IMG/VR virus record: IMGVR_UViG_3300017593_000998
Span: 1-12,529 of that record
Length of the DNA: 12,529 nucleotides
Strand: one strand, 5' to 3'
This document shows positions 1-12,529 of this stretch, in pieces (the first letter of the stretch is position 1; each line of letters opens with the position of its first letter). A program made the translations under genes and the position numbers. Under the pieces are notes generated by a model that had not been told where the DNA came from, did no database searches, and saw nothing but the letters and a program-made list of their open reading frames with translations.

Positions 1-1013
1 TCGCCACCGCACGACTCAACGCACTGGTCGTAGCTGTCCATCGCCGACTGGACGAAGTTGAGGTAGTACTTGAAGTTCTCGGAGCGCCTCGATTCCATCC
101 TATCAAAGGTCACGCACACGGTGGCCACTATGAGGGCCACGAGGATTAGTGCCACGATGTACCCCGGAATTGGCAGTCCGAGCCCGCCGACACGGCGCAC
201 CGGCATGTAAACTATGTATCCGTCGCTCGTCTCCTCGACGTACGGCCCGGTGACGGCCTTTCCAGAGTCCGTAGTGTAGGGCGTCGGGTCAAGCGCCAGC
301 CCGAAGCCCGCCAGCAGGTTCTGGATGTCGTCAATCTGGCCCTTTATCTTGCGCTCGTAGACGTACTCGGCCACCGAGCTGAAGCCCGGAATCTTGTAAA
401 CGATGCCCTCCGGCTTCTTGTAGTAGAACTTGAACACGTCCCTGTCGGCGGTGAGCGTGGTGAACGGCATATCGAGGAGCCTTGCCTCGTAGCCGACCCA
501 GTAGTAGCCGTCCGGGATGACTACCGTTTGCAGGTCCATGCACCCAAGTACCGGGTCGTAGCGCGTGCACACCTGCAACTGCCTGGTCTTTAGGTTGGAG
601 CTCGGGTAGCGGCCCCACATGACGCCCGACTTCCACTCCCTATACTGCGTTTCGAGCGGCCTGTCCTCCGGCTTGTTCAGCCCGGCGTAGAGCAGGTGGG
701 TCGCCGTCTTGTAGTCCACGAGCAGGACTGGAAACATGGTGGCGTACTGCCTGCCCTGCTCGTCCGTCTTGACGTAGTACTGGAGGAAGATACGGTGGAC
801 GTTCGGCGAGTAGCGCACCCTTATGTCGCCGATGACCTTCTCCTTGTACGTGCTGAGCACCTGCGACGGGATCTGGAAGGTCTCCGGGTCAAAGGGGACG
901 TACATCACAGTGCCCCAGCCCCCCACCTTGAAGAGGTTGAGCGCTGGCGCGTCAGTAGGTTCAAGGGGCGGGCTGACCGCTATCAGCTTACCCTCCTTAA
1001 CCAGCATGGTCAT
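1..1013 (-). CDS. Membrane protein, >337 aa, truncated by the window edge; contains a diverged copy of the W/Y-rich repeat domain and a TM helix (absent from the ORF track)
   Basis: ATG at 1013 after GGGGGAGGCGGTGA, 3 nt past the upstream stop. The frame is open to the window edge: MTMLVKEGKLIAVSPPLEP...LLYAGLNKPEDRPLETQYREWKSG...DGYYWVGYEARLL...GLPIPGYIVALILVALIVATVCVTF (TM)...DSYDQCVESCGG. Confidence 0.9.
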   Translation of the reverse strand, partial: MTMLVKEGKLIAVSPPLEPTDAPALNLFKVGGWGTVMYVPFDPETFQIPSQVLSTYKEKVIGDIRVRYSPNVHRIFLQYYVKTDEQGRQYATMFPVLLVDYKTATHLLYAGLNKPEDRPLETQYREWKSGVMWGRYPSSNLKTRQLQVCTRYDPVLGCMDLQTVVIPDGYYWVGYEARLLDMPFTTLTADRDVFKFYYKKPEGIVYKIPGFSSVAEYVYERKIKGQIDDIQNLLAGFGLALDPTPYTTDSGKAVTGPYVEETSDGYIVYMPVRRVGGLGLPIPGYIVALILVALIVATVCVTFDRMESRRSENFKYYLNFVQSAMDSYDQCVESCGG

Positions 1014-1016
1014 AAC

Positions 1017-1448
1017 TCACCGCCTCCCCCTAGTTCCAGCGTAGTCGAGCGCCAGCAGGATTAGGGCGTAAGCGCCGAGAAGCTTCAGCATCCCAATCAT
1101 GTTGCTCTTGCTGTCAACTGTCAGCTTTGCGGGGTACTGGACGAGGTACCACAAACCGTCGCTCTGGCAGTACTGCCTCTCCAGCTCAACGCCGTTCATC
1201 CAGTTCTGCACAATCTGGTCAACCGTATGGTCGGGTGGCTTGGAGGGGCTCTTGTAAATGACGCGCACCTTTGAAGGGTCGCCGTAGATTGTCAAATGAG
1301 CCCCCATCACGTCCGGGTTTACCTGCTTAACTATGTCGGTAACGTCAATTATTGGGCTGGTCTGGTTCGCCCATCTCACAAGGCGCGGGCTGTTCTTGTA
1401 GGTGTTCACCATCCCGCTTATGAGCGTCTCGACGCTACACTCCACCAT
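1017..1448 (-). CDS. 143-aa protein: one copy of the W/Y/C-rich repeat domain plus a C-terminal membrane anchor
   Basis: RBS GGAGGTGA 5 nt before ATG. Clearly homologous to the N-terminal domain of 2354..4390 (WANQxSP, DVT, LTIYGD, NWxxGVExERQYCQxDGxWY). Ends MIGMLKLLGAYALILLAL followed by RGRR. Confidence 0.9.
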   Translation of the reverse strand: MVECSVETLISGMVNTYKNSPRLVRWANQTSPIIDVTDIVKQVNPDVMGAHLTIYGDPSKVRVIYKSPSKPPDHTVDQIVQNWMNGVELERQYCQSDGLWYLVQYPAKLTVDSKSNMIGMLKLLGAYALILLALDYAGTRGRR

Positions 1449-1460
1449 GCTATCACCTCC

Positions 1461-1928
1461 TCAGCCGAACAGCAGTATGCCGCCGATAATCAGGGGCAGG
1501 AGCAGGTTGCCGCCCTCCTCCTCAGCGGGCGCCTGTGCCTCCCCCGTCGTCTCCGGTGTCTTTGTCGCCGTGCCCTGTATGGTGACGACGAAGCTGTCCC
1601 CGGCAATCTTCTCGCCGTCGGGCCCCCTGAACTCGACGACGAACCGCACCGGCCCGCTCACCGGCACGGCGTTACTGGGGCAAGTGATTGGGTAACCCGT
1701 CACCGTGTAGCCCTCGACGACGGTGCAGTAGGGCACCTGGACTGGAATCTCGACGTAGAGCGGCGGCTGGAGGTCGAGGACGGGGCTGGTCTGCCACTCA
1801 AGGCCGGCGCCCCTGACGACGAAGTACCCGCTGACCGGTGGCTGTGCGTAGTCGAGGACGACCTGGATGTTCATGACTTCGCCCGACCGATAGACAGACC
1901 TGTCGGGCCTCGCTGACATTACTACCAT
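1461..1928 (-). CDS. 155-aa protein: complete Ig-like domain, acidic linker and C-terminal TM anchor
   Basis: RBS GGAGGTGG. Ig-like opening PDRSVYRSGEVMNIQV. Last two strands GPVRFVVEFRG and EKIAGDSFVVTI. One Cys pair. Ends in hydrophobic LLLPLIIGGILLFG. Confidence 0.85.
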   Translation of the reverse strand: MVVMSARPDRSVYRSGEVMNIQVVLDYAQPPVSGYFVVRGAGLEWQTSPVLDLQPPLYVEIPVQVPYCTVVEGYTVTGYPITCPSNAVPVSGPVRFVVEFRGPDGEKIAGDSFVVTIQGTATKTPETTGEAQAPAEEEGGNLLLPLIIGGILLFG

Positions 1929-1944
1929 CTTTCACCACCTCCTT

Positions 1945-1999
1945 TGAAGGCTGGGGGCCCCCACCGTGGACGGCGGAGGGTCAGCCTCCGGCTCCTTCA
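1945..1999. other. GC-rich, highly self-complementary intergenic segment
   Basis: TGAAGG (1945-1950) and CCTTCA (1994-1999) enclose the palindrome TGGGGGCCCCCA (1952-1963), CCGTggACGG (1964-1973) and CGGAGG-gtcag-CCTCCG (1974-1990). Confidence 0.45.
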
Positions 2000-2332
2000 G
2001 ATTGGCACAGCGTAGTCCTCCGGAACGTACATACTGACGCTAACTGACCCGGTGTACGTTCCTGAAGTCGTCGGGGCCGTGAAGGTGAACGATTTGCTCC
2101 CTCTGCCTTTAGAGCCGACTGATATAGTGCCGCTCTGTGTCTTTCCGAATAGCTTGGCTATAATGGAGAAGTTTGCTGAAAACGGGTTGGGGTTGTCCAC
2201 TGTAACAGTTACCGTCACGGGCTCCCCCGGGGCAACTGCCGTTTTGTTTAGGGCTACGTCGAAGCTACCTTTTTGGGCCACCGGCTTCACGGTTACGCTC
2301 ATAGACCTGGTTCCCAGGCTAATCCACCCCAC
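1997..2332 (-). CDS. 111-aa protein: N-terminal putative donor strand plus a CARDB/Ig-like domain apparently lacking its last strand
   Basis: RBS GGGGGTGA upstream. Starts MGWISLGTRSMSVTV. Ig pattern LNKTAVAPGEPVTVTVTVDN...KSFTFTAPTTSGTYTGSVSVSMY, then only VPEDYAVPI*. Confidence 0.88.
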   Translation of the reverse strand: MGWISLGTRSMSVTVKPVAQKGSFDVALNKTAVAPGEPVTVTVTVDNPNPFSANFSIIAKLFGKTQSGTISVGSKGRGSKSFTFTAPTTSGTYTGSVSVSMYVPEDYAVPI

Positions 2333-2353
2333 TCATATCACCCCCTACAATTT

Positions 2354-4390
2354 TTAGTAATACGCGTAAAGCTCGACCTTAACCCCATGCTCACCCACCT
2401 TAACATCCGGGGGGACTGTTATTGGGGCCTCGATTATCGTCGGGCTTGTGGTTGCAGTGACCTCTTCTGACTCGTAGTGCCTGCCGAATGCGTCAATGCC
2501 GAGCTTGAACTTTAGACTACCCGGCGCCTCCCAGTTGACTTTTGCTATTATTTTCAGGGTGTCGCCGGCCGCTACTGTGGTCTTGTCAACGCTGGCCTCC
2601 CAGCCGATTGTTGGAGCTGTTACGTAAACCTGCTTTGACATTGCATAGAACCCACTATCAGAGTATCTAAGCAATATCAGCGTGAGCGTGTGGTAGCCAG
2701 TTGATAGTGGTGGTAGCTTTGCAACTTTCGTGAACCTTCTCTGCCCGGCCTTCCAAGCGTCGTAGTTGACCTCTACCTGGTCAACCAGCTTGCCGTCCAC
2801 GAATAGCTTCGCGCCCCAGGGCCTTTCGTAATGTGTCACGTACCCTCCAACGTCATAGTTGTAAGCCACAACTCTTACGTAACCCTCAACCCCAAACTCT
2901 ACTGTCCCATCGCTCCTTATATTTAGTATTGGAGTCGCCCTGGGTGCATTGTACTTAAATTCGGCCGGTATCTTGACCCAGTACCACTTTCCGCTCTTTG
3001 AAGAGTACATTCTTTCCATTTCGTAGCCTTCCAGCCAGCCCTTGACCACCTTAGTGCAGAAAGTATAACCATCGCTGTACCTGTCGGGCGGTTTGTCCCA
3101 GCCGTATTCAATGACTTCAATCTGGCTCGGCCTGTCTAGGTAGAGCTTCACCGTGCCGCCACTGGAGTAGTTGTCGTCTGCGTATCTTAGGCGGGTTCCG
3201 AATACAGTTATTTCGTCCAAGTATTCATAAGTTGGGTACTTTCTGTTCATCGTTGACTTCAGCTTGCTCTCGACGTTTATTGTCGGGGTCTTGCTCCCGT
3301 AGTAGGAGACGAGCGAGTTAACGAAGTCTTGGACAGAAGGCTCCTGGGTTCCCGGGATGACCCATGAGTACTGTGCACTCTCGTCCTCAACCCAGCCACC
3401 GCTGTAAAGCTCCACGAGGCCCTTGAGCGTGTACTTTCCGGGCAGGTTTGGCATCTTGAAGGTGAATGAGCCAGAAGTGCTCTTACCACTAGCAAGGTAG
3501 TACTCCTTCGAATACACCTGGACGACCTGAGAGTTCGGCTGTACCAGGAGAAACCTAAGCCTGAATTTGTAGCTCTTGTCCCAGCCGTTGGTGTGCGTCC
3601 AGTTTACAGTCACGGTCTCTCCAAGGCCGGGGTTGGACGGGCTAAGCTTGAAGGAGAACCTTTTCACCGTTACTGCCTCAGTCTCTATGTCGAGCTTGCA
3701 CGGGTAGAGAACCCAGTACCACTTTCCAGTCTTACTGCACTGTACCCTCTCCCACTCCTGGCCAGCCATCCAGTTCTCAACGATGTTCTTCAGCGCCTCA
3801 GTGCCGTACTTCTCAATGACGGCCGGCCTGCCGTCATAGTACTTATCTGGCTTGGTGTCGTACGGGCCGATTATCTTCTGGGGCTTGCTACGATAGACTG
3901 TAAGAGTGCCCCTTATGACCTTCGGCTGGACCACGTACTGGTCAACAATGCCAGTCACGTCAACAACCGCGTCCTGCTGAACAAAGTCATTCAGAACGCA
4001 GGGTAGGGTTAGGGTGCCCTGGACTTCGAGCTTGCACGGGTAGATGACCCAGTACCACTCGCCGTCCTCCTGGCAGTACTGGCGCTCGAACTCGACGCCT
4101 GCCAGCCAGTTGTGGAGGATGTTCCACCTCGCCCTGTCGCCGTACACGCCCACGTCGGCCGGCCTGCCGTCCGGGTACGTGGTGGGTTTTGTGGAGCCGG
4201 CCTTGACGATTTTTATCCTCGCAAGGTCGTCGCCGTAAATGGTAAGGGTGGCCTTGGTGACCTTTGGGCAGACCGCCCTGACCGTCTCGGTGACATCAAG
4301 GACTGGGGAGTACTGGTTAGCCCAGCTAATGGCAGTCTTGGAGTAGTTGTTCACCATTCCGTCCCTGAATATTTTAGCGTCGCACCCCAC
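2354..4390 (-). CDS. ~678-aa modular surface or spike protein: repeat-repeat-Ig-repeat-Ig-Ig (last Ig incomplete)
   Basis: Start moved to GTG at 4390: it follows RBS GAGAGGTGA, and MGCDAK parallels MVECSV of the 143-aa paralog. Three copies of the W-x-x-G-x-E-x-E-R...G-x-W-Y-W-V domain and three Ig-like segments. Ends GEHGVKVELYAYY*. No signal peptide or TM. Confidence 0.92.
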   Translation of the reverse strand: MGCDAKIFRDGMVNNYSKTAISWANQYSPVLDVTETVRAVCPKVTKATLTIYGDDLARIKIVKAGSTKPTTYPDGRPADVGVYGDRARWNILHNWLAGVEFERQYCQEDGEWYWVIYPCKLEVQGTLTLPCVLNDFVQQDAVVDVTGIVDQYVVQPKVIRGTLTVYRSKPQKIIGPYDTKPDKYYDGRPAVIEKYGTEALKNIVENWMAGQEWERVQCSKTGKWYWVLYPCKLDIETEAVTVKRFSFKLSPSNPGLGETVTVNWTHTNGWDKSYKFRLRFLLVQPNSQVVQVYSKEYYLASGKSTSGSFTFKMPNLPGKYTLKGLVELYSGGWVEDESAQYSWVIPGTQEPSVQDFVNSLVSYYGSKTPTINVESKLKSTMNRKYPTYEYLDEITVFGTRLRYADDNYSSGGTVKLYLDRPSQIEVIEYGWDKPPDRYSDGYTFCTKVVKGWLEGYEMERMYSSKSGKWYWVKIPAEFKYNAPRATPILNIRSDGTVEFGVEGYVRVVAYNYDVGGYVTHYERPWGAKLFVDGKLVDQVEVNYDAWKAGQRRFTKVAKLPPLSTGYHTLTLILLRYSDSGFYAMSKQVYVTAPTIGWEASVDKTTVAAGDTLKIIAKVNWEAPGSLKFKLGIDAFGRHYESEEVTATTSPTIIEAPITVPPDVKVGEHGVKVELYAYY
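3690..4059. repeat. 34-bp direct repeat (32/34 identical) at 3690-3723 and 4026-4059; a 17-bp part (3711-3727) recurs at 2976-2992
   Basis: tcgagcttgcacgggtaga(ga/tg)acccagtaccact, encoding the WYWV(L/I)YPCKL ends of the repeat domains. Confidence 0.85.
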
Positions 4391-4711: not shown

Positions 4712-5035
4712 TTAACCAAACATGTGGTTTAACGCCCAGATTAGCAGCCCGCTGGATATAGCAATTGAGATTATAACAGTGGCCCCTTTTACCTTGTCTC
4801 GAAAGGATTCCAGTTGCTCGACTTTAAGCTCCAGTTCTTTTATCCTCTGGTCGGTGTCTGCCTGGTACATTTCCACCATCTCCTTCAGTTCGTCATTGTT
4901 TTTTTCCAGCATGCTAATGATTTCATCGAGCCTGCTCTTAACCCATTCAAGGTCAGTAGATAGCTTGGCGATTGCCACCCCCATATCCATCATTTTTTGG
5001 CTGAGGCCGTTTCCGGAGTTCTCCCCGCTCCCCAC
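4712..5035 (-). CDS. 107-aa coiled-coil protein with C-terminal TM helix (architecture like XhlA/holin-type viral membrane proteins)
   Basis: RBS GGGGGCGG before GTG. Heptad-like LSTDLEWVKSRLDEI...IKELELKVEQLE, then hydrophobic ATVIISIAISSGLLIWAL. Confidence 0.8.
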   Translation of the reverse strand: MGSGENSGNGLSQKMMDMGVAIAKLSTDLEWVKSRLDEIISMLEKNNDELKEMVEMYQADTDQRIKELELKVEQLESFRDKVKGATVIISIAISSGLLIWALNHMFG

Positions 5036-5060: not shown

Positions 5061-5348
5061 TCAGTCCCAGTCCTCCATCTCGGAGCGCTGGTCAGTGAGG
5101 CTCTGGTGCAGGACGTCGTGGAGCTGGGCCACGTCGAGCTTCAGCGCCTCCACGTCGTTGCGGAGCCTGGCGACCTCCTCGCTGAGCTGGCGGGCTTCCC
5201 TCTGCAAGTCCATGACCATGCTCTCAACCAGCTCGACCTTACCGTTGCTGACAGCTGAGCCGACCCTGCTGAACAGCCGGTACATGACCAGCGCCACGAG
5301 CGTCCCGCCGGCCAGCACCGAGACGAAGGCCCCCGTGTCAAACATCAC
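5061..5348 (-). CDS. ~95-aa protein with N-terminal TM helix and coiled coil
   Basis: AFVSVLAGGTLVALVMY, then heptads LQREARQLSEEVARLRNDVEALKLDVAQL. Overlaps the upstream stop. Start at GTG 5348 or ATG 5345. Confidence 0.8.
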   Translation of the reverse strand: MMFDTGAFVSVLAGGTLVALVMYRLFSRVGSAVSNGKVELVESMVMDLQREARQLSEEVARLRNDVEALKLDVAQLHDVLHQSLTDQRSEMEDWD

Positions 5349-5718: not shown

Positions 5719-6189
5719 TCACGGGAACGTTACTGTGACGTAGATGTCAAGCAGGATTGAGCTGTCCTTCGTTATGGCCGGGTCGATGGTCACGTGGTTG
5801 AACAGGGTTCCGGTAGTGTAGTCGTTGCCGTCCGTGTGCTCGTAGATGCCGGCCTCGGTGTAGGTGTAGCCGTTCGCGTCCTCCGGCAGGTAGCGGACGT
5901 AGTACTGGACTGTGTTGTTGCTCACGGTCACCTGTCCTGTCTTGGCAGAGCTGGGAACGGCGGTGAACAGGCCGGTGTCGTTTTCGCTCGGCGTCCCCGA
6001 GCCGGTTCCGAGGACGAGGAACCAGTTCGAGGAGCCCTGGCCCTGGCCCCACGCCTGGGCAAACATCTGCTTGGCGGCGGTCGTCAGGACGTTCTTCCTC
6101 TCCACAACGTTTACAACTTCGCCGGTCTCGGCGTCCCTGGCCACGAACTTCCAGGTCGCAACCGCCCCGACGGTTTCCCCAACCTTCAT
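5719..6189 (-). CDS. 156-aa virion protein, phage tail-collar/fibre-base-like (DUF3751-like), paralog A
   Basis: RBS GGGGGTGA. Motif chain NVLTTAAK...LVLGTGSGTP..NDTGL...EDANG...TEAGIY...GTLF...ITKD...LDIYVTV, typical of this widespread phage structural family (recognised by eye). Confidence 0.75.
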   Translation of the reverse strand: MKVGETVGAVATWKFVARDAETGEVVNVVERKNVLTTAAKQMFAQAWGQGQGSSNWFLVLGTGSGTPSENDTGLFTAVPSSAKTGQVTVSNNTVQYYVRYLPEDANGYTYTEAGIYEHTDGNDYTTGTLFNHVTIDPAITKDSSILLDIYVTVTFP

Positions 6190-6202
6190 AACATCACCCC
6201 CC

Positions 6203-6886
6203 TTATGGCAGTATTTTTATTGTGACATAAACGTCGAGTATGATGTCGGGCGTCTTCTCAATGCTCTGAGGGAGTAGGGCGTGTTCGAAGAGCACACCCG
6301 CCGTGTAGCGGTCGGGCGGGATGTAGTACTCGGCGTAGCTGTAGTCGCCGACCTGGTACCACTTCGGCGGTATGTTCTCGTAGATGCCGACCTCAGTGAA
6401 CGTGTAGCCGTTCAGCTCCTCGGGCATGTAGCGGACGTGGTACTGGAAGCCCCTGACCCCGCCCGTGCCGTCGAGGTACGTCAGGTCGGCGTCCGAGCCG
6501 TAGGGGAACGGCGTTATGTTCACGTGCCAGCCGCTCTGGTCGTGGGTGATGCTTATGGCCGCCCCGTCCTGGCCCTCCCCACGGGCGCTCTCGGGTACGG
6601 CCTGGAACAGGTCAGTGTCGCTCACGTCAGGCGTCCCGCTCCCGGTGCCGAGGACGAGCGCCCAGTACGGGCGGACATAGTAGCCGATGTCGTTTGGGCA
6701 GATAGGGTTTGAGGCCGGGTTGAGCCGTTTGGCCACGTACTTTCCCGTGAGCCAGGCCTGCCGGAGCAGGTCAGCGCCGGCGTTTGTTATGACGTTCTCG
6801 GTCGTTACCTCCTGCACCTTGCCCGTGCGGACGTTCGTCGCCACGACCCGGACGACGCCCTTAACTCCAAGCTCATCTACCCTCAT
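6203..6886 (-). CDS. 227-aa virion protein, tail-collar/fibre-base-like, paralog B with three insertions
   Basis: Start moved to ATG 6886 (RBS GGGGGTGG, directly after the upstream stop at 6888). Shares LVLGTGSGTP, AVPxSA, YxVRYxPExxNGYTxTExGIYE and ILLD/IILD with paralog A. Confidence 0.78.
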   Translation of the reverse strand: MRVDELGVKGVVRVVATNVRTGKVQEVTTENVITNAGADLLRQAWLTGKYVAKRLNPASNPICPNDIGYYVRPYWALVLGTGSGTPDVSDTDLFQAVPESARGEGQDGAAISITHDQSGWHVNITPFPYGSDADLTYLDGTGGVRGFQYHVRYMPEELNGYTFTEVGIYENIPPKWYQVGDYSYAEYYIPPDRYTAGVLFEHALLPQSIEKTPDIILDVYVTIKILP

Positions 6887-6887
6887 A

Positions 6888-8096
6888 TCAACCACCCCCG
6901 GCGTAGCGTTCAAACTTATTCAAGGTATAGTTTGTCGCCTCAGGCAGGCTCATGACGGATGGGTCGCTCTCGTCGGTCGTGTTGTTTGGGTTCAGCTCCA
7001 CGAAGAACCTCGTCTCGCTGTCAATGCCTATCCAGATGACCGCTTGTGGTGTTGAAGTGTCCCAAGTCTCGATGTAGTACGGCAGGCTGTAGCGTGCTGA
7101 GGCATACGCAATTCTAATGTCCGAGCCGTCAGCGTTTGCTTTTATGAAGTCAAAGTTCGAGCCGTCGAGGTCAATTGCAACTTGGAAGTGCTCTAGGTCA
7201 TAGTTGTTCGGGTTGGTGATTGTTATCTTACGGCGGTAGAGCCATCCGGAGATGTCGCTTGATTCTTCTTCGCCTACAACAATAGTTGGCTCTTGCTCGG
7301 CATACTTGCGGACACGAACCCAATCAATAAGCGTCTCCATACTTGCATCGTATGCACTTTTCTGAAATATCATCACGTAACCAGAGAAAGCATTTGTCTG
7401 CGTAATACTCGCTGTATTACCATCCCAATATCCTATATGTATATTCCCATCTGTCTTTATTCCTACTTGATGCCATTCGTTGCCCGTAATTGTCGCCAAC
7501 TCGCTTGATACCACTGAATTTCCGTCGTTAGAGACTATCCTTGTCGGATAACCCGAGCGGTATTTTAATTCCAGTCTTACGAGTGGTGCTTGCTCTGATG
7601 TCTGCGATGACGATAGTTCTAAGTGTACAGTATATGAACTCTTTAGCATAACCCTTGCCTCAACTACAAGAGGTTGTGTGAATGTGCGTTGTGTCGCCAA
7701 ATAGATTTTATTTGCAGCCCCTATACTTGTCTTAATGTCAAGTATGCTGTCTGATACTGTAATCGATGTCGAACCTTCTTCTACTAGTGTCCACTTTGTT
7801 GTGTCAACCGATGAACCCTCAAAATCATCATATAAGTCAAACACCTGCTCTGGGTCGCTCTCGCTCACCGCTGAGGGGTTTCCGTAGTAAACATACAAAT
7901 CAACGCTACTGTTAGCAGGGATTTTTGGCACTTTGACCCATACTTTTCCCTGCCCGTTTTGAGCGTCCCATTTTTCTATCCAGTACGGGAGTTTCCACGG
8001 CAAGCTCCACACCCTAACCGCTTCCCTCTTATTCTGAGCGTCGTCAAAAAACCTTTGAGCCGTAACCGTCAACTGCACCCTTTGAGTCGCCATCAC
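6888..8096 (-). CDS. ~401-aa DUF2341-containing protein with a central concanavalin/LamG-like beta-sandwich; candidate receptor-binding protein
   Basis: DUF2341-type motifs LPYWIEKWD...VWVKVPKIP...LYVYYGNPSA..SD...VF..YDDF, DWVRVRKY...EP, and WLYRRKITI...FQV.IDLD...FDF.KA..DGSDIR. Confidence 0.85.
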   Translation of the reverse strand: MMATQRVQLTVTAQRFFDDAQNKREAVRVWSLPWKLPYWIEKWDAQNGQGKVWVKVPKIPANSSVDLYVYYGNPSAVSESDPEQVFDLYDDFEGSSVDTTKWTLVEEGSTSITVSDSILDIKTSIGAANKIYLATQRTFTQPLVVEARVMLKSSYTVHLELSSSQTSEQAPLVRLELKYRSGYPTRIVSNDGNSVVSSELATITGNEWHQVGIKTDGNIHIGYWDGNTASITQTNAFSGYVMIFQKSAYDASMETLIDWVRVRKYAEQEPTIVVGEEESSDISGWLYRRKITITNPNNYDLEHFQVAIDLDGSNFDFIKANADGSDIRIAYASARYSLPYYIETWDTSTPQAVIWIGIDSETRFFVELNPNNTTDESDPSVMSLPEATNYTLNKFERYAGGG

Positions 8097-8104
8097 TCAC
8101 CACC

Positions 8105-9079
8105 TCACGTCACGCTATATTCGGCATACCACTCGCTTATGTCAAACGCACCCGTTCCGGCAGTCGTGGAGTAGTACTCCAGGGTGTCTAAGCTGTCTTG
8201 GGTTTCTTGAGGCGTTAGGGTCTGCACGGATACCACGTTTAGCGTTAGTTCGTCATAGGTGCTCTGCTGTTCGCTTATGCTGGAGGACATCATCACCTGA
8301 TATTCGGCGTACCACTCGCTTATGTCAAACGGCGTGCTGGCGGGCCCCGTTGATGTCAGCACCCTATCATGTGCATACACCGACTCGGCAAAGGCCCTGA
8401 TGACCAGCGCCTCATCGTCCTGCGGGACGTAGCCGGCCGGTATGTCGTCAGACCACTGGCGCTCGTCGAACCTCAGCACCTCGGCGGAGGCCGTGCTGGT
8501 GCCGAACGCCTCGCTTGTCTGTGCGGTCTCATCGAAGGTCAGCGTGACGGCCTGCGCCTGGTAGGTTGATATGCTGTCCTCGGGCACTACTGGCTCGTCA
8601 AAAGAGGGCGTGAGTATCTGGCCCGACCACACCTCGAAAGAAACCGAGTCGTCAATCGTCTCATCGAACGCCTGCACCACCACGTCGGCGGTCGAAACGG
8701 ATATTGAGGTGCCCGACTGCTGGGCTTCATCAAAGTATCTGCGCACGGCGTCGGCGGTCGTGTAGCTCAGGCCGTCGGTGCTGGTCTGCTCCTCTTCCAG
8801 CGCCCGAATTACCAGCGGTCTTGTCACGGCACCCACGTCTTCTTGTAGGACTTCAATTAACTCCTTAGCAATGTCGTCGTACGTGGCCACCACCACGGCG
8901 TCCCCGGCGCTCGCCATCTCACGGACGGTGTAGATGTATCGGTCTCTGATGACCACGAGCGTTATGTCGCCGCTGTGGTGCACTTCGGCCTCAACTGCCT
9001 TGCTGAGCAGGTCAATTAACCTCCTCGGCCCGAGCCTCGTACTGCCAACCTTCAGCACCGACGGCCAGCGCCCATTCAT
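8105..9079 (-). CDS. 324-aa acidic protein with about nine to ten ~22-aa repeats; candidate spike/fibre shaft or scaffold
   Basis: FDE recurs five times at exact 22-aa spacing, with further degenerate units. FDISEWYAEY occurs twice near the C-terminus. Confidence 0.85.
   Translation of the reverse strand: MNGRWPSVLKVGSTRLGPRRLIDLLSKAVEAEVHHSGDITLVVIRDRYIYTVREMASAGDAVVVATYDDIAKELIEVLQEDVGAVTRPLVIRALEEEQTSTDGLSYTTADAVRRYFDEAQQSGTSISVSTADVVVQAFDETIDDSVSFEVWSGQILTPSFDEPVVPEDSISTYQAQAVTLTFDETAQTSEAFGTSTASAEVLRFDERQWSDDIPAGYVPQDDEALVIRAFAESVYAHDRVLTSTGPASTPFDISEWYAEYQVMMSSSISEQQSTYDELTLNVVSVQTLTPQETQDSLDTLEYYSTTAGTGAFDISEWYAEYSVT
8117..8331. repeat. 32-bp direct repeat (31/32 identical) at 8117-8148 and 8300-8331
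   Basis: atattcggc(a/g)taccactcgcttatgtcaaacg, 183 bp apart and in frame, encoding FDISEWYAEY. Confidence 0.9.
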
Positions 9080-9426: not shown

Positions 9427-9987
9427 TCACGGCAGGAACCCCTCGTACTCCCTTATTATCCTCGGCGCCGGGGCCGGCAGTCCGGGCGTGGGCGGCTGTG
9501 CTGGCACCTGTACCTGCAACTGCGGCATCAGCGCCCTGAGCGACCCTATGAACAAATCCATGTTGGTGACCCTGATGAGCAGGACCTCGTAGTTCAGCGT
9601 GGCGTCGCTTGAGCCGCCGATAAGCTCAATCCTCATCCTGCCCTTGATGGCCAGCGGCGGGTTCGGCGAGAGCTCCACGGCGTACTCGTTCGTGCCCGGC
9701 GAATAGACCGCAACGAAGGGCATGGTCGAGGTGAAGGTGTAGCCCTTGCCCTCCAGCTCACTCGCTATCAGCCGGAACTCCGTGGTGCTACCGAAGGCCG
9801 GGTCGTACTCAATCCTCAGCCCTGCGTCCGGCACGTTGGAGGTCACCCTTGCCCCGATGAACCACCCTGCCTCCTCGTCGGGTGAGGAGTAAACCTCCTT
9901 CTTCTTGCCCGCCTCGACCGGCTCGGTGTCCACGTACCGTATTTCCGTCCAGCCCTCAAGGAGCGGGAGCATACTCAGCAGGTCCAT
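9427..9987 (-). CDS. 186-aa beta-rich protein with a Pro-rich tail; candidate penton or minor capsid protein
   Basis: Start moved to ATG 9987 (MDLLSMLP; RBS GGAGGAGTGA, 4 nt after the upstream stop). Alternating strands GWFIGARVTS, GLRIEYD, YAVELSPNPPL, GRMRIELI, NYEVLLIRV. The fold is inferred. Confidence 0.7.
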   Translation of the reverse strand: MDLLSMLPLLEGWTEIRYVDTEPVEAGKKKEVYSSPDEEAGWFIGARVTSNVPDAGLRIEYDPAFGSTTEFRLIASELEGKGYTFTSTMPFVAVYSPGTNEYAVELSPNPPLAIKGRMRIELIGGSSDATLNYEVLLIRVTNMDLFIGSLRALMPQLQVQVPAQPPTPGLPAPAPRIIREYEGFLP

Positions 9988-9991
9988 GTTA

Positions 9992-10564
9992 TCACTCCTC
10001 CCACCATTCAATTCTGACGCAGTACTTCGCAGTCTTGTCGGACGTGTTCTCAACCTCTATGTATATGCCGTGGCCCTCCAGTATCTGCCCTGCCATGCCT
10101 CTGGTCGCCGGCGCCCCTGTGGCCCACTTGCCGGAACCGCCGGGCAGTAGGGTCTCGGTGTACTCCGTGGTGTAACCACTGTACGTTCCGCCGTGCTCGA
10201 ACACCACTACCGACGTGGCGTTGCCGCCAACGAGCTTTCCAAGCACAGGTATCGCCGTGCCGCTGGAGTCAATCGTCGGGTCGTGGTGTATCCTGACAAC
10301 GCCCTCTGCCCCGCCGAACACCAGCAGGGCCTTGACGTAGAGCGACTTGCCGCTCCCCTGCGGGTTGATGAAGACGAAGCCGTGGGTGTCGCCGGAGTCA
10401 ATGTCCACTACCTTGGCCGCCGCAAAGCCCTTGTCAGCCATGACGATTGAGCTCCACACGTCGTCGGTCTTAGCCGTGTCGGCCACGACTATCTTGTCGT
10501 TGATTTCTGCAACGTTGGGGTCAGAGCGGAAGGCGCCCGTTTTCATCACCTCCGGGCGCCTCAC
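9992..10564 (-). CDS. ~184-190-aa beta-sandwich virion protein (NPxGSG...WWEE pattern, reminiscent of DUF6143)
   Basis: FINPQGSGKSLYVK and C-terminal VRIEWWEE. Start uncertain (GTG 10564 overlapping the upstream stop, or ATG 10546). The family resemblance is from memory and unverified. Confidence 0.7.
   Translation of the reverse strand: MRRPEVMKTGAFRSDPNVAEINDKIVVADTAKTDDVWSSIVMADKGFAAAKVVDIDSGDTHGFVFINPQGSGKSLYVKALLVFGGAEGVVRIHHDPTIDSSGTAIPVLGKLVGGNATSVVVFEHGGTYSGYTTEYTETLLPGGSGKWATGAPATRGMAGQILEGHGIYIEVENTSDKTAKYCVRIEWWEE
10531..10561 (-). promoter_or_regulatory. 9-bp GC-rich hairpin enclosing the RBS and ATG of the ~190-aa gene
   Basis: Minus strand AGGCGCCCG-GAGGTGATGAAAA-CGGGCGCCT, beginning at the last base of the upstream stop codon. 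Confidence 0.5.
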
Positions 10565-11668: not shown

Positions 11669-12352
11669 TCAGAAGTTGGCCTTGAGGAACCTGCCGCGTC
11701 CAACGACAACGCCGAGGAGCTTAATCTTGCCGGTGGTCGGGGTGCCGCTGTCGTAGTCCGGGCTGTGGACCTCAATCTTGAAGTACTCCTTGGGGAGCAC
11801 CGGTATGGCGTTGAAGTTCCAGGCCGGAACGTCGTTCCTGTTGTCAGTGAGGATGGCGTTGCTGACATCGAGCGGCAGGAGGCTCCTCTGGCCGACCTGG
11901 ACGCGTATTCCGTCGGTCCTGGCGGTGATGGTGTCGCCGTCGTAGAGGTCGATGATGCCGAAGACTATCATACCAACGTCGTCGTTGAGGCTACCCTCGG
12001 CGAGGGTGACCCACTCGGTGGCGTAGGTTATCTTGAAGTAGGCGCCGTCGGCGGTGACGGCTGAGCCAAGGAGGCTGTTGCCACCGTTGTCCTTGAGGTG
12101 CGCCGGCCTTACCGGGGCAAAGCCGAGCTCCATGTCCTCGGCGAGCTGGCCGCCGAAGGTCGGGTTTCCGAGGGCGAACTTGACGGCCTCGACGAAGCCC
12201 CTTATCTGGTTCTTGTAGGTCTGAAGGAGCTCATAGACAACTCCGTCCTTCGGGCCGAAGAGGTTGTCAATCTGGACGCTGAACTTGGCCTCCTCCTTCC
12301 CGACGAGCGGGGTGGCGTTGAGGTCCCTATCGATACTCTCAAACCTGACCAT
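11669..12352 (-). CDS. 227-aa candidate major capsid protein (helical N-terminus plus beta-rich, possibly single jelly-roll domain)
   Basis: Start moved to ATG 12352 (GGAGGTGA plus 5 nt). Very strong GC3 bias, its own terminator, and position near the start of the structural block. The CDS is solid; the capsid role is inference only. Confidence 0.6.
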   Translation of the reverse strand: MVRFESIDRDLNATPLVGKEEAKFSVQIDNLFGPKDGVVYELLQTYKNQIRGFVEAVKFALGNPTFGGQLAEDMELGFAPVRPAHLKDNGGNSLLGSAVTADGAYFKITYATEWVTLAEGSLNDDVGMIVFGIIDLYDGDTITARTDGIRVQVGQRSLLPLDVSNAILTDNRNDVPAWNFNAIPVLPKEYFKIEVHSPDYDSGTPTTGKIKLLGVVVGRGRFLKANF

Positions 12353-12365
12353 CTTTTTCACCTCC

Positions 12366-12529
12366 TCAGTACAGGAACTCCTCCTCAACCGGTGCGGGGG
12401 CTGGCTGGGCCGGGGCCACCGGAGTAACAGTCAGGGTGACTGGCTGGGCCGGGGCGTAGGTGCTCATGGCCGCCTGCTCCCAGGTGAGTCCGAGGCTGGC
12501 GCCGACCTTGTTGGCAAGGTCATCAGGGC
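12366..12529 (-). CDS. C-terminal part of an upstream protein with a Pro/Ala-rich tail (absent from the ORF track)
   Basis: ...PDDLANKVGASLGLTWEQAAMSTYAPAQPVTLTVTPVAPAQPAPAPVEEEFLY*. The stop abuts the next RBS. APAQP is encoded by a 16-bp repeat at 12401-12416 and 12440-12455. Confidence 0.8.
   Translation of the reverse strand, partial: PDDLANKVGASLGLTWEQAAMSTYAPAQPVTLTVTPVAPAQPAPAPVEEEFLY

What the first reader, a model, noticed from the sequence alone, without database searches (positions are those of the whole stretch)
470..4390. Unrecognised ~120-aa W/Y/C-rich domain present five times in three genes
Seen: a shared pattern DVT...[AG]xLT[IV]Y...KP...W-x-x-G-x-E-x-E-R-x-x-C-x-x-x-G-x-W-Y-W-V-x-Y-P-[AC]-K-L in the 143-aa protein and three times in the 678-aa protein (the third copy has Ser for Cys). 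A diverged fifth copy lies in 1..1013: LLYAGLNKPEDRPLETQYREWKSG and DGYYWVGYEARL align with VIYKSPSKPPDHTVDQIVQNWMNG and DGLWYLVQYPAKL, with an insertion carrying its own Cys pair. The domain is used both directly TM-anchored and on an Ig stalk. Inference: a possibly new adhesin, glycan-binding or homotypic lattice module, perhaps disulfide-stabilised.
Basis: partly seen in the sequence, partly recalled or inferred. Interest (0 to 1): 0.72.

Follow-up and report, generated by a model that had tools for sequence, protein, structure and literature searches.

The report
New repeated domain in archaeal-virus proteins
Three neighbouring genes of an uncultivated archaeal virus carry four clear copies and one diverged copy of a ~115-residue domain that matches no known protein family or solved structure; it is probably a surface-exposed binding unit of the virus particle.

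Summary
The 143-aa protein (pB) aligns to three places in the 678-aa protein (pE), with BLASTP E-values of 8e-28, 5e-14 and 3e-11. The third copy lacks both paired cysteines.

The fifth copy, in the truncated gene at 1..1013 (pA), is a real but partial relative. Profile-profile probability is 94.9% (E 4e-8), against 1.1% at best for 31 controls. It covers only the C-terminal half of the domain and contains a roughly 28-residue insert carrying a Cys pair.

The family is small: 58 clusters among 1.84 billion proteins. It has no hit in Pfam, NCBIfam, PHROGs or PDB sequences. An AlphaFold model with pLDDT 94 has no Foldseek neighbour in PDB or BFVD (TM 0.24 or lower).

Most members lack a signal peptide. 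Many end in a single transmembrane helix. Others combine the domain with Ig-like, CARDB or PKD modules, including secreted archaeal surface proteins.

In the window the genes follow fibre-like genes in what looks like a virion module.

My best reading, which is inferred rather than shown, is a disulfide-braced module on the virion surface that binds the host envelope. A role in docking pE onto the anchored pB and pA remains a serious rival.

The parts
2354..4390 (-). pE gene: 678 aa with no signal peptide and no TM helix. Layout is D1-D2-Ig-like-D3-beta-rich-Ig-like.
   Evidence: ORF. Start at GTG 4390 from orthologues beginning M-P-C and an upstream GGTGAT. Orthologues P0001-P0011.
4001..4390 (-). 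Domain copy 1 (pE residues 1-130), full length, with the Cys pair plus extra cysteines
   Evidence: BLASTP to pB E 8e-28; HMM envelope 1-130
3665..4000 (-). Domain copy 2 (pE residues 131-242). It lacks about 18 residues of the N-terminal helix and first strand but keeps both paired cysteines.
   Evidence: BLASTP to pB E 5e-14; alignment; Cys positions
3422..3649 (-). Ig-like (CARDB-like) beta-sandwich between copies 2 and 3
   Evidence: Pfam CARDB 18.0 bits against a cut-off of 22.7, so below threshold. BLASTP to the 111-aa pD, E 6e-4.
2930..3346 (-). Domain copy 3 (pE residues 349-487), without the Cys pair (Ser at the second position)
   Evidence: BLASTP to pB E 3e-11; alignment; HMM envelope
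2480..2653 (-). Second Ig-like stretch near the pE C-terminus, paralogous to pD
   Evidence: BLASTP pD against pE, E 3e-4
1997..2332 (-). pD: 111-aa Ig-like protein (BatD/CARDB-like, just below the Pfam cut-off)
   Evidence: Pfam BatD 23.4 bits against a cut-off of 24.1
1461..1928 (-). pC: 155-aa protein with a Thr/Glu/Pro/Ala-rich linker followed by a hydrophobic C-terminal end. It does not carry the domain.
   Evidence: Sequence. No domain hit in the six-frame HMM scan.
1017..1448 (-). pB gene: 143 aa, made of the domain followed directly by a C-terminal TM helix and a basic tail
1098..1445 (-). Domain copy 4 (pB residues 2-117), the reference copy. Predicted fold: helix, strand, strand, helix, strand, strand, helix, strand, strand.
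   Evidence: AlphaFold pLDDT 94.1, pTM 0.77
1047..1103 (-). pB C-terminal transmembrane anchor (residues 116-134)
   Evidence: Hydropathy 1.86; AlphaFold helix 115-140
1..1013 (-). pA gene, cut off by the window edge. 337 of 405 aa are present (full length is P0078). It has an N-terminal ectodomain, a TM helix, a Cys-rich helical hairpin and a second TM helix.
474..728 (-). Diverged fifth copy (pA residues 96-180, window numbering), aligning to domain positions about 50-110
   Evidence: hhalign probability 94.8-94.9%, E 4-5e-8; controls 1.1% or lower; HMM 11.5 bits
540..569 (-). Cys pair C149/C158 inside the beta-hairpin insert of the fifth copy
   Evidence: Conserved in most pA homologues. 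The hairpin is strands 143-151 and 155-163 in P0078 numbering, which is 2 lower than window numbering.
105..161 (-). First TM helix of pA (residues 285-303)
   Evidence: Hydropathy 2.84; AlphaFold helix from 282

Best explanation
SHOWN:
- The stretch 470-4390 encodes a real and previously unclassified protein domain of about 110-130 residues.
- It occurs three times in the soluble 678-aa pE, once in the tail-anchored 143-aa pB, and once in the two-TM protein pA, in a diverged, insert-bearing form detectable only over its C-terminal half.
- The predicted fold is a compact alpha/beta unit: three helices and six strands, ending in a long beta-hairpin that carries the W-x-x-G-x-[ED]-x-x-R ... C ... 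[WY]-Y-W-V-x-Y-P-x-x-L signature.
- The element is an uncultivated archaeal virus (IMG/VR UViG).

INFERRED:
- The N-terminal Cys and the Cys after the E-x-E-R strand form a bracing disulfide.
- pE, pD, pC, pB and pA, together with the two small coiled-coil TM proteins upstream, are components of the virion surface.
- pB and pA sit in the viral membrane through C-terminal or internal TM helices. None of these proteins has a signal peptide, so the domain never crosses a membrane. It faces the cytoplasm during synthesis and ends up on the outside of a particle whose membrane forms inside the cell.
- There the domain acts as a multivalent binding unit for a conserved component of the archaeal cell envelope, either glycan or S-layer. 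The same domain does this job on secreted PKD/Ig-rich surface proteins of some archaea.
For: Reality of the domain and size of the family:
- Pairwise E-values 8e-28 to 3e-11.
- 58 clusters at E 1e-3 or better among 1.84e9 representatives, 38 of them at 1e-10 or better.
- The signature is kept in the most distant members.

No known relative:
- Pfam, PHROGs, NCBIfam and the PDB sequence profile are all negative.
- The pLDDT-94.1 model has a best Foldseek E of 0.16 in PDB and 0.048 in BFVD, with TM 0.24 or lower.

Disulfide: Cys co-occurrence is 51 both, 1 first only, 21 second only, 30 neither. Copy 3 has lost both.

Surface or binding role:
- Distant members are fused to four PKD domains (P0067), to CARDB/NPCBM_assoc/Big domains (P0075), or to an InlB B-repeat plus thioredoxin (P0062).
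- Some of these have N-terminal signal or TM segments.
- Two adjacent PKD proteins carrying a C-terminal copy lie in an archaeal cluster of surface-protein genes (S8 peptidase, O_anti_polymase) with the tRNA-modification genes Trm56 and TtuA on the same contig.

Virion-module context:
- The genes follow two fibre-like paralogues. These hit the Pfam phage tail-collar fibre N-terminal family (E 5.5e-4) and phrog_5417/18275, and have homologues in betalipothrixviruses.
- A DUF2341 protein upstream has weak relatives in rudiviruses.
- In L001 the pE orthologue lies 1.3 kb downstream of a 590-aa protein with short tail-fibre-like matches.

Modularity:
- Copy number is 1-4 among pE relatives.
- Related contigs carry different mixes of pE-, pB- and pA-type genes.

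Mosaicism: against the related contig L007, pD, pC and the 3' end of pE are 100% identical in DNA. The domain-bearing parts are 64-88% identical in pE and 73-77% in pB; pA averages about 75-80%, with two poorly aligned windows.

Topology:
- Most members lack an N-terminal hydrophobic segment, and many have a single C-terminal TM helix.
- Envelopment inside the cell is established for a filamentous archaeal virus (Baquero et al. 2021, PMC8364153, cited in PMC10791045).
Against: - No experiment or virion proteome exists, and the virus type and host are unknown. pE, pA and two other window proteins have no match in deposited phage or archaeal-virus genomes.
- No lectin, CBM or adhesin fold was matched.
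- Across ten pE orthologues, copies 1 and 2 are the most conserved parts (73% and 66% mean identity). The Ig-like and C-terminal parts are more variable (43-58%). That is the pattern of a virion-proximal attachment end rather than a variable receptor-binding tip.
- The residues conserved across all copies could be purely structural.
- A cytoplasmic disulfide is expected mainly in hyperthermophiles, but amino-acid composition gives only about 46 C. This estimator is crude because it was calibrated on whole proteomes.
Confidence: 0.42

Rival explanations
1. Docking or assembly module. The domain binds itself or its paralogues. The membrane-anchored copies in pB and pA form the base onto which the soluble pE is docked through its conserved N-terminal copies 1 and 2. 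The variable Ig-like and C-terminal parts of pE would then contact the host.
For: - Anchored and soluble versions are encoded side by side in the window and in L001, L004 and L007.
- Copies 1-2 are the best conserved part of pE and sit at its N-terminus, while the C-terminal half varies most. Phage fibres show the same pattern.
- An often unpaired third Cys (the YPCKL position, in 58% of instances) could make intermolecular links.
Against: - L008 has pB and pA but no pE. L010 has a single two-copy protein and no detected partner.
- Cellular homologues carry the domain on secreted PKD proteins with no obvious anchored partner.
- No oligomer prediction could be run.
Confidence: 0.3
2. Intracellular role. 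The tail-anchored proteins insert into the host cytoplasmic membrane with the domain facing the cytoplasm. They would act in assembly-site formation, egress or superinfection exclusion, not on the particle surface.
For: - There are no signal peptides, and the C-terminal anchors are the classic tail-anchor layout that leaves the N-terminal domain in the cytoplasm.
- Two small coiled-coil TM proteins lie next to the cluster.
Against: - Homologues with signal peptides and PKD/CARDB modules point to an extracellular setting.
- The covarying Cys pair suggests a disulfide.
- The neighbouring genes are fibre-like.
Confidence: 0.12
3. Small enzyme domain, for example glycan-cleaving, that uses the conserved acidic residue and arginine of the W-x-x-G-x-[ED]-x-x-R strand.
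For: An acidic residue, an Arg and an Asp (in the DVT motif) are conserved in 86-93% of instances. Virion-associated depolymerases are common in viruses of prokaryotes (established knowledge).
Against: - No structural or sequence similarity to any hydrolase.
- The second Glu of E-x-E-R is not kept in distant members.
- Three tandem copies in one protein are typical of binding modules, not catalytic domains.
Confidence: 0.05
4. Chance resemblance or compositional artefact: the W/Y-rich motifs recur without common descent.
For: Only the fifth copy is weak by pairwise comparison, with E-values between 0.05 and 0.5.
Against: - E-values of 8e-28 to 3e-11 for the four clear copies.
- Hundreds of bits against orthologues.
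- For the fifth copy, hhalign gives 94.9% against 1.1% or lower in 31 controls.
Confidence: 0.01

Closest known systems
Modular receptor-binding or fibre proteins of prokaryotic viruses, built from small binding domains and Ig-like (CARDB, Big, PKD) modules
   Same: - Location beside fibre-like genes.
- Tandem small domains interleaved with Ig-like beta-sandwiches.
- Copy-number variation among orthologues.
- Recombination mosaic between close relatives.
   Different: - The repeated domain has no sequence or predicted-structure relative among known fibre, lectin or CBM domains.
- The Ig-like assignments are below Pfam thresholds.
- Paralogues are directly membrane-anchored.
Tail-anchored surface proteins of viruses enveloped in the cytoplasm. 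Examples are the vaccinia mature-virion attachment proteins H3 and D8, whose surface proteins get disulfides from a cytoplasmic viral redox pathway (my own knowledge, not tested here), and the intracellular envelopment of the lipothrixvirus SIFV (Baquero 2021, PMC8364153).
   Same: - No signal peptide, with the N-terminal domain followed by one C-terminal TM helix (pB and many homologues).
- A probable disulfide in a domain made in the cytoplasm.
- A thioredoxin-fold module or gene is present in some relatives (P0062, L011).
   Different: - No sequence or fold relation.
- Envelope formation, virion location and topology are unknown for this virus.
- This is an analogy of mechanism only.
C-type lectin-like domain (a lead recalled from memory because of the W-x-x-G-x-E ... 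C ... G-x-W ... C spacing)
   Same: Similar size (about 120 aa), an aromatic/acidic motif before a Cys, and an alpha/beta composition.
   Different: - No Pfam Lectin_C hit.
- No C-type lectin chain among the 50 best Foldseek matches listed in PDB, and all of those have TM 0.23 or lower.
- The order of secondary-structure elements and the Cys pattern differ.
- Not a member.
Cell-envelope anchoring or binding modules at the ends of secreted surface proteins (for example SLH domains or CBMs in bacteria)
   Same: In an archaeal chromosome fragment, two adjacent PKD-repeat proteins end in this domain. P0067, whose N-terminus was examined, has an N-terminal hydrophobic signal-like segment and no C-terminal TM helix. 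This is the position typical of such modules.
   Different: No homology to SLH or to any CBM family in Pfam. The ligand is unknown.

Membership tests
The new domain family itself (defined here by the HMM of 90 instances) | Signature D-V-T ... L-T-[IV]-Y ... K-P ... W-x-x-G-x-[ED]-x-x-R ... C ... [WY]-Y-W-V-x-Y-P-x-x-L over about 110 residues | tested here: met
   pB and pE copies 1-3 have domain i-E-values of 1e-46 to 2e-56 against the four-copy profile built from these same copies. Independent support comes from pairwise BLASTP and from orthologues scoring up to E 1e-43 per domain. Conserved columns are listed.
The new domain family itself | Fifth copy (pA) matches the whole domain | tested here: inconclusive
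   Only positions about 50-110 align (hhalign 94.9%, E 4e-8). The N-terminal half gives no sequence signal, although the order of predicted helices and strands in pA 17-181 resembles that of pB. No tool could superpose the two models.
The new domain family itself | Bracing disulfide between the N-terminal Cys and the Cys after the E-x-E-R strand | not testable with these tools
Pfam CARDB / BatD Ig-like domains (the 'Ig stalk') | Score above the Pfam gathering threshold | tested here: not met
   pE 251-326 scores 18.0 bits for CARDB against a cut-off of 22.7. pD scores 23.4 bits for BatD against 24.1. An Ig-like fold is likely but family membership is not shown.
C-type lectin-like domain | CTLD fold and Lectin_C profile match | tested here: not met
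   No Pfam hit. No C-type lectin chain among the 50 best Foldseek PDB matches listed, and all of those have TM 0.23 or lower.
Tail-anchored membrane proteins | No N-terminal signal or TM segment, and a single TM helix within about 30 residues of the C-terminus | tested here: met
   In pB the domain starts at residue 2, hydropathy peaks at 116-134 of 143 residues, and AlphaFold predicts a helix at 115-140. The same layout is seen in many single-domain homologues. Insertion pathway and topology were not tested.
Virion structural or host-recognition module | Proteins present in virions, with recognised capsid or fibre genes nearby | tested here: inconclusive
   Neighbouring genes are fibre-like: Pfam Phage_tail_fib E 5.5e-4 (below cut-off), phrog_5417 E 1e-17 (function unknown), phrog_4176 tail fibre E 1e-5 to 2e-4, and betalipothrixvirus homologues. 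No capsid protein was recognised and no proteomics exists.

The most novel reading that the evidence does not exclude
The domain is a new protein fold shared by archaeal viruses and archaeal cell-surface proteins, and it binds a conserved component of the archaeal envelope. On the virus it reaches the particle surface without crossing a membrane: tail-anchored proteins are inserted from the cytoplasm into an envelope built inside the cell, with their disulfide formed in the cytoplasm. That would be an archaeal counterpart of the poxvirus mature-virion strategy.
Probability: 0.22. Interest if true: 0.75.

Novelty: categorically new. Interest (0 to 1): 0.55.

Why it matters
Most genes of archaeal viruses have no known relatives, and for nearly all uncultivated archaeal viruses the proteins that recognise the host are unknown.

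This domain offers a compact, confidently modelled unit that recurs in about 58 protein clusters. It links viral membrane proteins, a large fibre-like protein and secreted archaeal surface proteins.
- If it binds an envelope component, it would be a handle for predicting virus-host contacts in hydrothermal archaea.
- It would also be a new binding scaffold, possibly a thermostable one.
- If the tail-anchor topology is right, it would show how an archaeal virus decorates an internally formed envelope.

"Categorically new" applies to the protein family and its predicted fold. The likely biological role, a modular surface protein of a virus, is a familiar kind.

Tried and rejected
- **C-type lectin lead.** I recalled this from the motif spacing. 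Pfam and Foldseek do not support it.
- **Foldseek of the pA model.** It returned pentameric ligand-gated ion channels at E 2e-4 to 2e-2, but with TM 0.10-0.19 and rmsd above 20 A. I treat these as an artefact of a beta-rich ectodomain followed by helices.
- **N-terminal Cys as a lipidation site** (M-G-C or M-P-C starts). Rejected, because the internal copy 2 keeps this Cys and it covaries with the second Cys.
- **Identifying the virus.**
  - megablast of the whole window and tblastn of pE, pA, the 221-aa and the 239-aa proteins against deposited phage and archaeal-virus genomes found nothing.
  - Only the 156-aa fibre-like protein (betalipothrixviruses) and the DUF2341 protein (rudiviruses, a Methanomicrobiales caudovirus) had weak relatives.
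- **IMG/VR scans.** They returned only the window's own contig, IMGVR_UViG_3300017593_000998.
- **GTDB genome scans.** The first found nothing and the second found one unclassified archaeal MAG. Alignment A3 was too diverse for the pattern scanner.
- **PDB sequence searches.** The domain profile and four window proteins gave nothing meaningful.
- **Literature searches.** Searches for the sample accessions and for tail-anchored archaeal virus proteins found nothing relevant.
- **Growth temperature from composition.** The estimate was about 46 C, too crude to settle whether cytoplasmic disulfides are expected.
- **Source samples.** The labels SPET22-1 and REYS20-1 look like deep-sea hydrothermal studies. 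This is my guess and is not verified.

Full report
**Layout of the window.** All plausible genes are on the minus strand. Most are preceded by a GGTGAT-type Shine-Dalgarno motif. In the direction of transcription, the region of the finding holds:
- pE (2354-4390, 678 aa)
- pD (1997-2332, 111 aa)
- pC (1461-1928, 155 aa)
- pB (1017-1448, 143 aa)
- pA (1-1013, cut by the window edge)

The window is the whole IMG/VR contig IMGVR_UViG_3300017593_000998.

**Copies 1 to 4.**
- BLASTP of pB against pE gives three independent matches with E-values of 8e-28, 5e-14 and 3e-11.
It also shows Ser for Cys in the third pE copy.
- Copy 2 is shorter, lacking about 18 residues of the first helix and strand.

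**The fifth copy.**
- Pairwise similarity of pA to the other copies is weak.
- I collected pA homologues from genes next to pB homologues and from a database search. The full-length pA is 405 aa (P0078).
- Profile-profile comparison of the pA family with the domain family gives 94.9% probability and E 4e-8. It covers pA residues 93-178 and domain positions about 50-110.
- Controls are clean: a reversed pA alignment gives 0.6%, and the best of 30 column shuffles gives 1.1%.
- The domain HMM independently hits six other pA-family members at the same place, and the pA HMM hits pB orthologues.
- The alignment skips a roughly 28-residue insert that carries a Cys pair conserved in most pA homologues. 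AlphaFold models this insert as a beta-hairpin.
- The N-terminal half of the domain gives no sequence signal in pA, although the order of helices and strands is similar.
- I therefore accept the fifth copy as homologous. It is demonstrated only for the C-terminal half.

**Is the domain known?**
- Sequence libraries are all negative. Pfam (window proteins and all 31 members of alignment A3), PHROGs, NCBIfam and a profile search of PDB sequences give nothing.
- AlphaFold2, run on a 31-sequence alignment, models pB with mean pLDDT 94.1 and pTM 0.77. The model is helix 6-18, strands 23-28 and 31-35, helix 37-43, strands 47-54 and 62-67, helix 76-84, strands 87-94 and 99-113, then the TM helix.
- Foldseek finds no neighbour. 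The best E is 0.16 in PDB and 0.048 (45 columns) in BFVD, with all TM-scores 0.24 or lower.
- AlphaFold DB and ESM Atlas could not be searched.

**Size and spread of the family.**
- A profile of the four copies finds 58 clusters (at 50% identity) with E 1e-3 or better among 1.84 billion representatives. Of these, 38 are at 1e-10 or better.
- Nearly all come from metagenomes. No member examined carries an informative name: the only named one is annotated as a hypothetical protein in a Thorarchaeota MAG.
- Distant members keep the signature.
- The core shared by all is roughly domain positions 27-110. The N-terminal helix with the first Cys is an extension seen mainly in the viral subgroup.

**Architectures.**
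- Many members are single-domain proteins that start with the domain at residue 1-5 and end with one TM helix and a basic tail.
- Others have an N-terminal Ig-like module, then the domain, then a TM helix.
- pE-type proteins have 1-4 copies interleaved with Ig-like modules and no TM helix.
- A few have N-terminal signal or TM segments and known extracellular modules: P0067 has four PKD domains, P0075 has CARDB/NPCBM_assoc/Big domains, and P0062 has an InlB B-repeat plus thioredoxin.

**Genomic contexts.**
- P0023 and P0054 lie on 31-kb and 51-kb contigs of small unannotated genes that look viral.
- P0067 and its neighbour, both PKD proteins ending in the domain, lie in an archaeal chromosomal cluster of surface-protein genes. 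The cluster has a 1470-aa S8 peptidase and O-antigen-polymerase-like genes, and Trm56 and TtuA lie on the same contig. The same gene is found in one unclassified archaeal MAG.

**Cysteines.**
- Across 103 domain instances, the N-terminal Cys (column 3) and the Cys after the E-x-E-R strand (column 93) occur together 51 times. Column 3 occurs alone once, column 93 alone 21 times, and neither 30 times (Fisher p 3e-11, not corrected for relatedness). Some of the 21 are cases where the N-terminal part was not aligned.
- This fits a bracing disulfide, and copy 3 has lost both.
- A third Cys, in Y-P-C-K-L, is present in 58% of instances and has no regular partner.

**Context in the window.**
- Upstream of pE lie two small coiled-coil proteins with one TM helix each.
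- Next come two paralogous fibre-like proteins of 156 and 236 aa. They hit phrog_5417 (E 1e-17), score sub-threshold against the Pfam tail-collar fibre family, and have homologues of about 32% identity in betalipothrixviruses such as AFV9 ORF164.
- A 402-aa protein has two DUF2341 domains and weak relatives in rudiviruses.
- In L001 a 590-aa protein with short tail-fibre-like matches lies 1.3 kb upstream of the pE orthologue.
- No capsid, terminase or portal protein was recognised, so the virion type stays unknown.

**Variation.**
- Related contigs hold different sets of domain genes:
  - L001: a pE type plus two single-domain genes
  - L004: a two-copy pE type plus a pA type
  - L007: pE, pD, pC, pB and pA types (its near-identical partial counterpart L006 holds pC, pB and pA)
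  - L008: pB and pA types only
- Against L007, DNA identity is 100% across window 1557-2456, which covers pD, pC and the 3' end of pE. It falls to 64-88% in the domain-bearing parts of pE and 73-77% in pB. pA averages about 75-80%, with two poorly aligned windows. This is a clear recombination mosaic.
- Across ten pE orthologues, however, copies 1 and 2 are the most conserved regions (73% and 66% mean identity). The Ig-like, middle and C-terminal parts range from 43% to 58%.

**Interpretation.**
- What is shown: a real, repeated, unclassified domain with a confident predicted fold; a tail-anchor layout for pB; the absence of signal peptides; and fusion partners that are extracellular modules.
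- What I infer: the cluster encodes virion surface components. The domain is exposed on the outside of a particle whose membrane is acquired inside the cell, so it needs no translocation. It binds a conserved envelope component of the host.
- Intracellular envelopment is documented for the lipothrixvirus SIFV (Baquero et al. 2021, PMC8364153, cited in PMC10791045). The analogy to poxvirus tail-anchored attachment proteins rests on my own knowledge.
- The main rival is that the domain docks soluble pE onto membrane-anchored pB and pA. The conservation pattern favours this rival. The contigs that lack a partner, and the cellular homologues, count against it.
- Two minor rivals are a cytoplasm-facing role in the host membrane and an enzymatic role.
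- Composition suggests only moderate thermophily, about 46 C. This weakens, but does not exclude, the idea of a disulfide formed in the cytoplasm.

**Verdict.**
- The domain family and its predicted fold appear new against every library available here. Its likely role, as a module of viral and archaeal surface proteins, is of a familiar kind.

Noticed in passing
window 1557-2456, against L007:1758-2629 and its flanks: There is a sharp recombination mosaic with a related contig from another sample. DNA is 100% identical over about 900 bp (pD, pC and the 3' end of pE), flanked by 64-88% identity in pE and 73-77% in pB; pA averages about 75-80%.
   Followed up: partly
window 5719-6189 and 6203-6913: Two paralogous fibre-like proteins of 156 and 236 aa. 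They hit phrog_5417/18275 and are sub-threshold for the Pfam tail-collar fibre family. Homologues of about 32% identity exist in Acidianus betalipothrixviruses (AFV9 ORF164), where their function is also unknown.
   Followed up: partly
window 6888-8096: A 402-aa protein with two DUF2341 domains (E 8e-35). It has weak tblastn relatives in the rudiviruses SBRV1 and SIRV4 and in a Methanomicrobiales caudovirus.
   Followed up: partly
window 8105-9079: A 324-aa acidic, Ser/Thr-rich protein with internal repeats. A 39-nt unit encoding F-D-I-S-E-W-Y-A-E-Y occurs twice at 90% identity, 183 nt apart, and there is a recurring F-D-E motif. No family hit was found.
   Followed up: partly
pA family: P0078 residues about 330-350; the start of this segment lies at window 1-30: Between the two TM helices of pA lies a helical hairpin carrying four cysteines (two Cys-x3-Cys motifs), kept in most homologues. 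It could hold two disulfides or a metal site on the opposite side of the membrane from the domain.
   Followed up: no
domain column 106 (Y-P-C-K-L), for example pE copies 1 and 2 at window 4001-4390 and 3665-4000: A third Cys is present in 58% of domain instances with no regular partner inside the domain, so many copies have an odd number of cysteines. It may be a free thiol or form intermolecular links.
   Followed up: partly
window 4712-5035 and 5061-5348: Two small coiled-coil proteins, one with a C-terminal TM helix and one with an N-terminal TM helix, lie just upstream of pE. The first has a 60%-identical homologue (DUF7201-like) at the same relative position in L008.
   Followed up: no
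window 9427-10053 and 9992-10564: The 208-aa and 190-aa ORFs overlap by 62 nt as listed. The 208-aa ORF probably starts at a later ATG. It is the only other window protein besides pE and pB with a relative in L001 (28% identity).
   Followed up: no
window 11669-12388: The 239-aa protein has a short, weak phmmer match to Fcp1-type CTD phosphatases in PDB (E 1.4e-4, 24.6 bits, about 65 residues). It is probably spurious.
   Followed up: no
L001:1-1956 and L004:13642-14865: An S8 peptidase gene lies near the structural module in two related contigs. In L001 it sits next to an IS605 OrfB/TnpB-like gene. Whether these genes are viral or belong to host flanks was not resolved.
   Followed up: no
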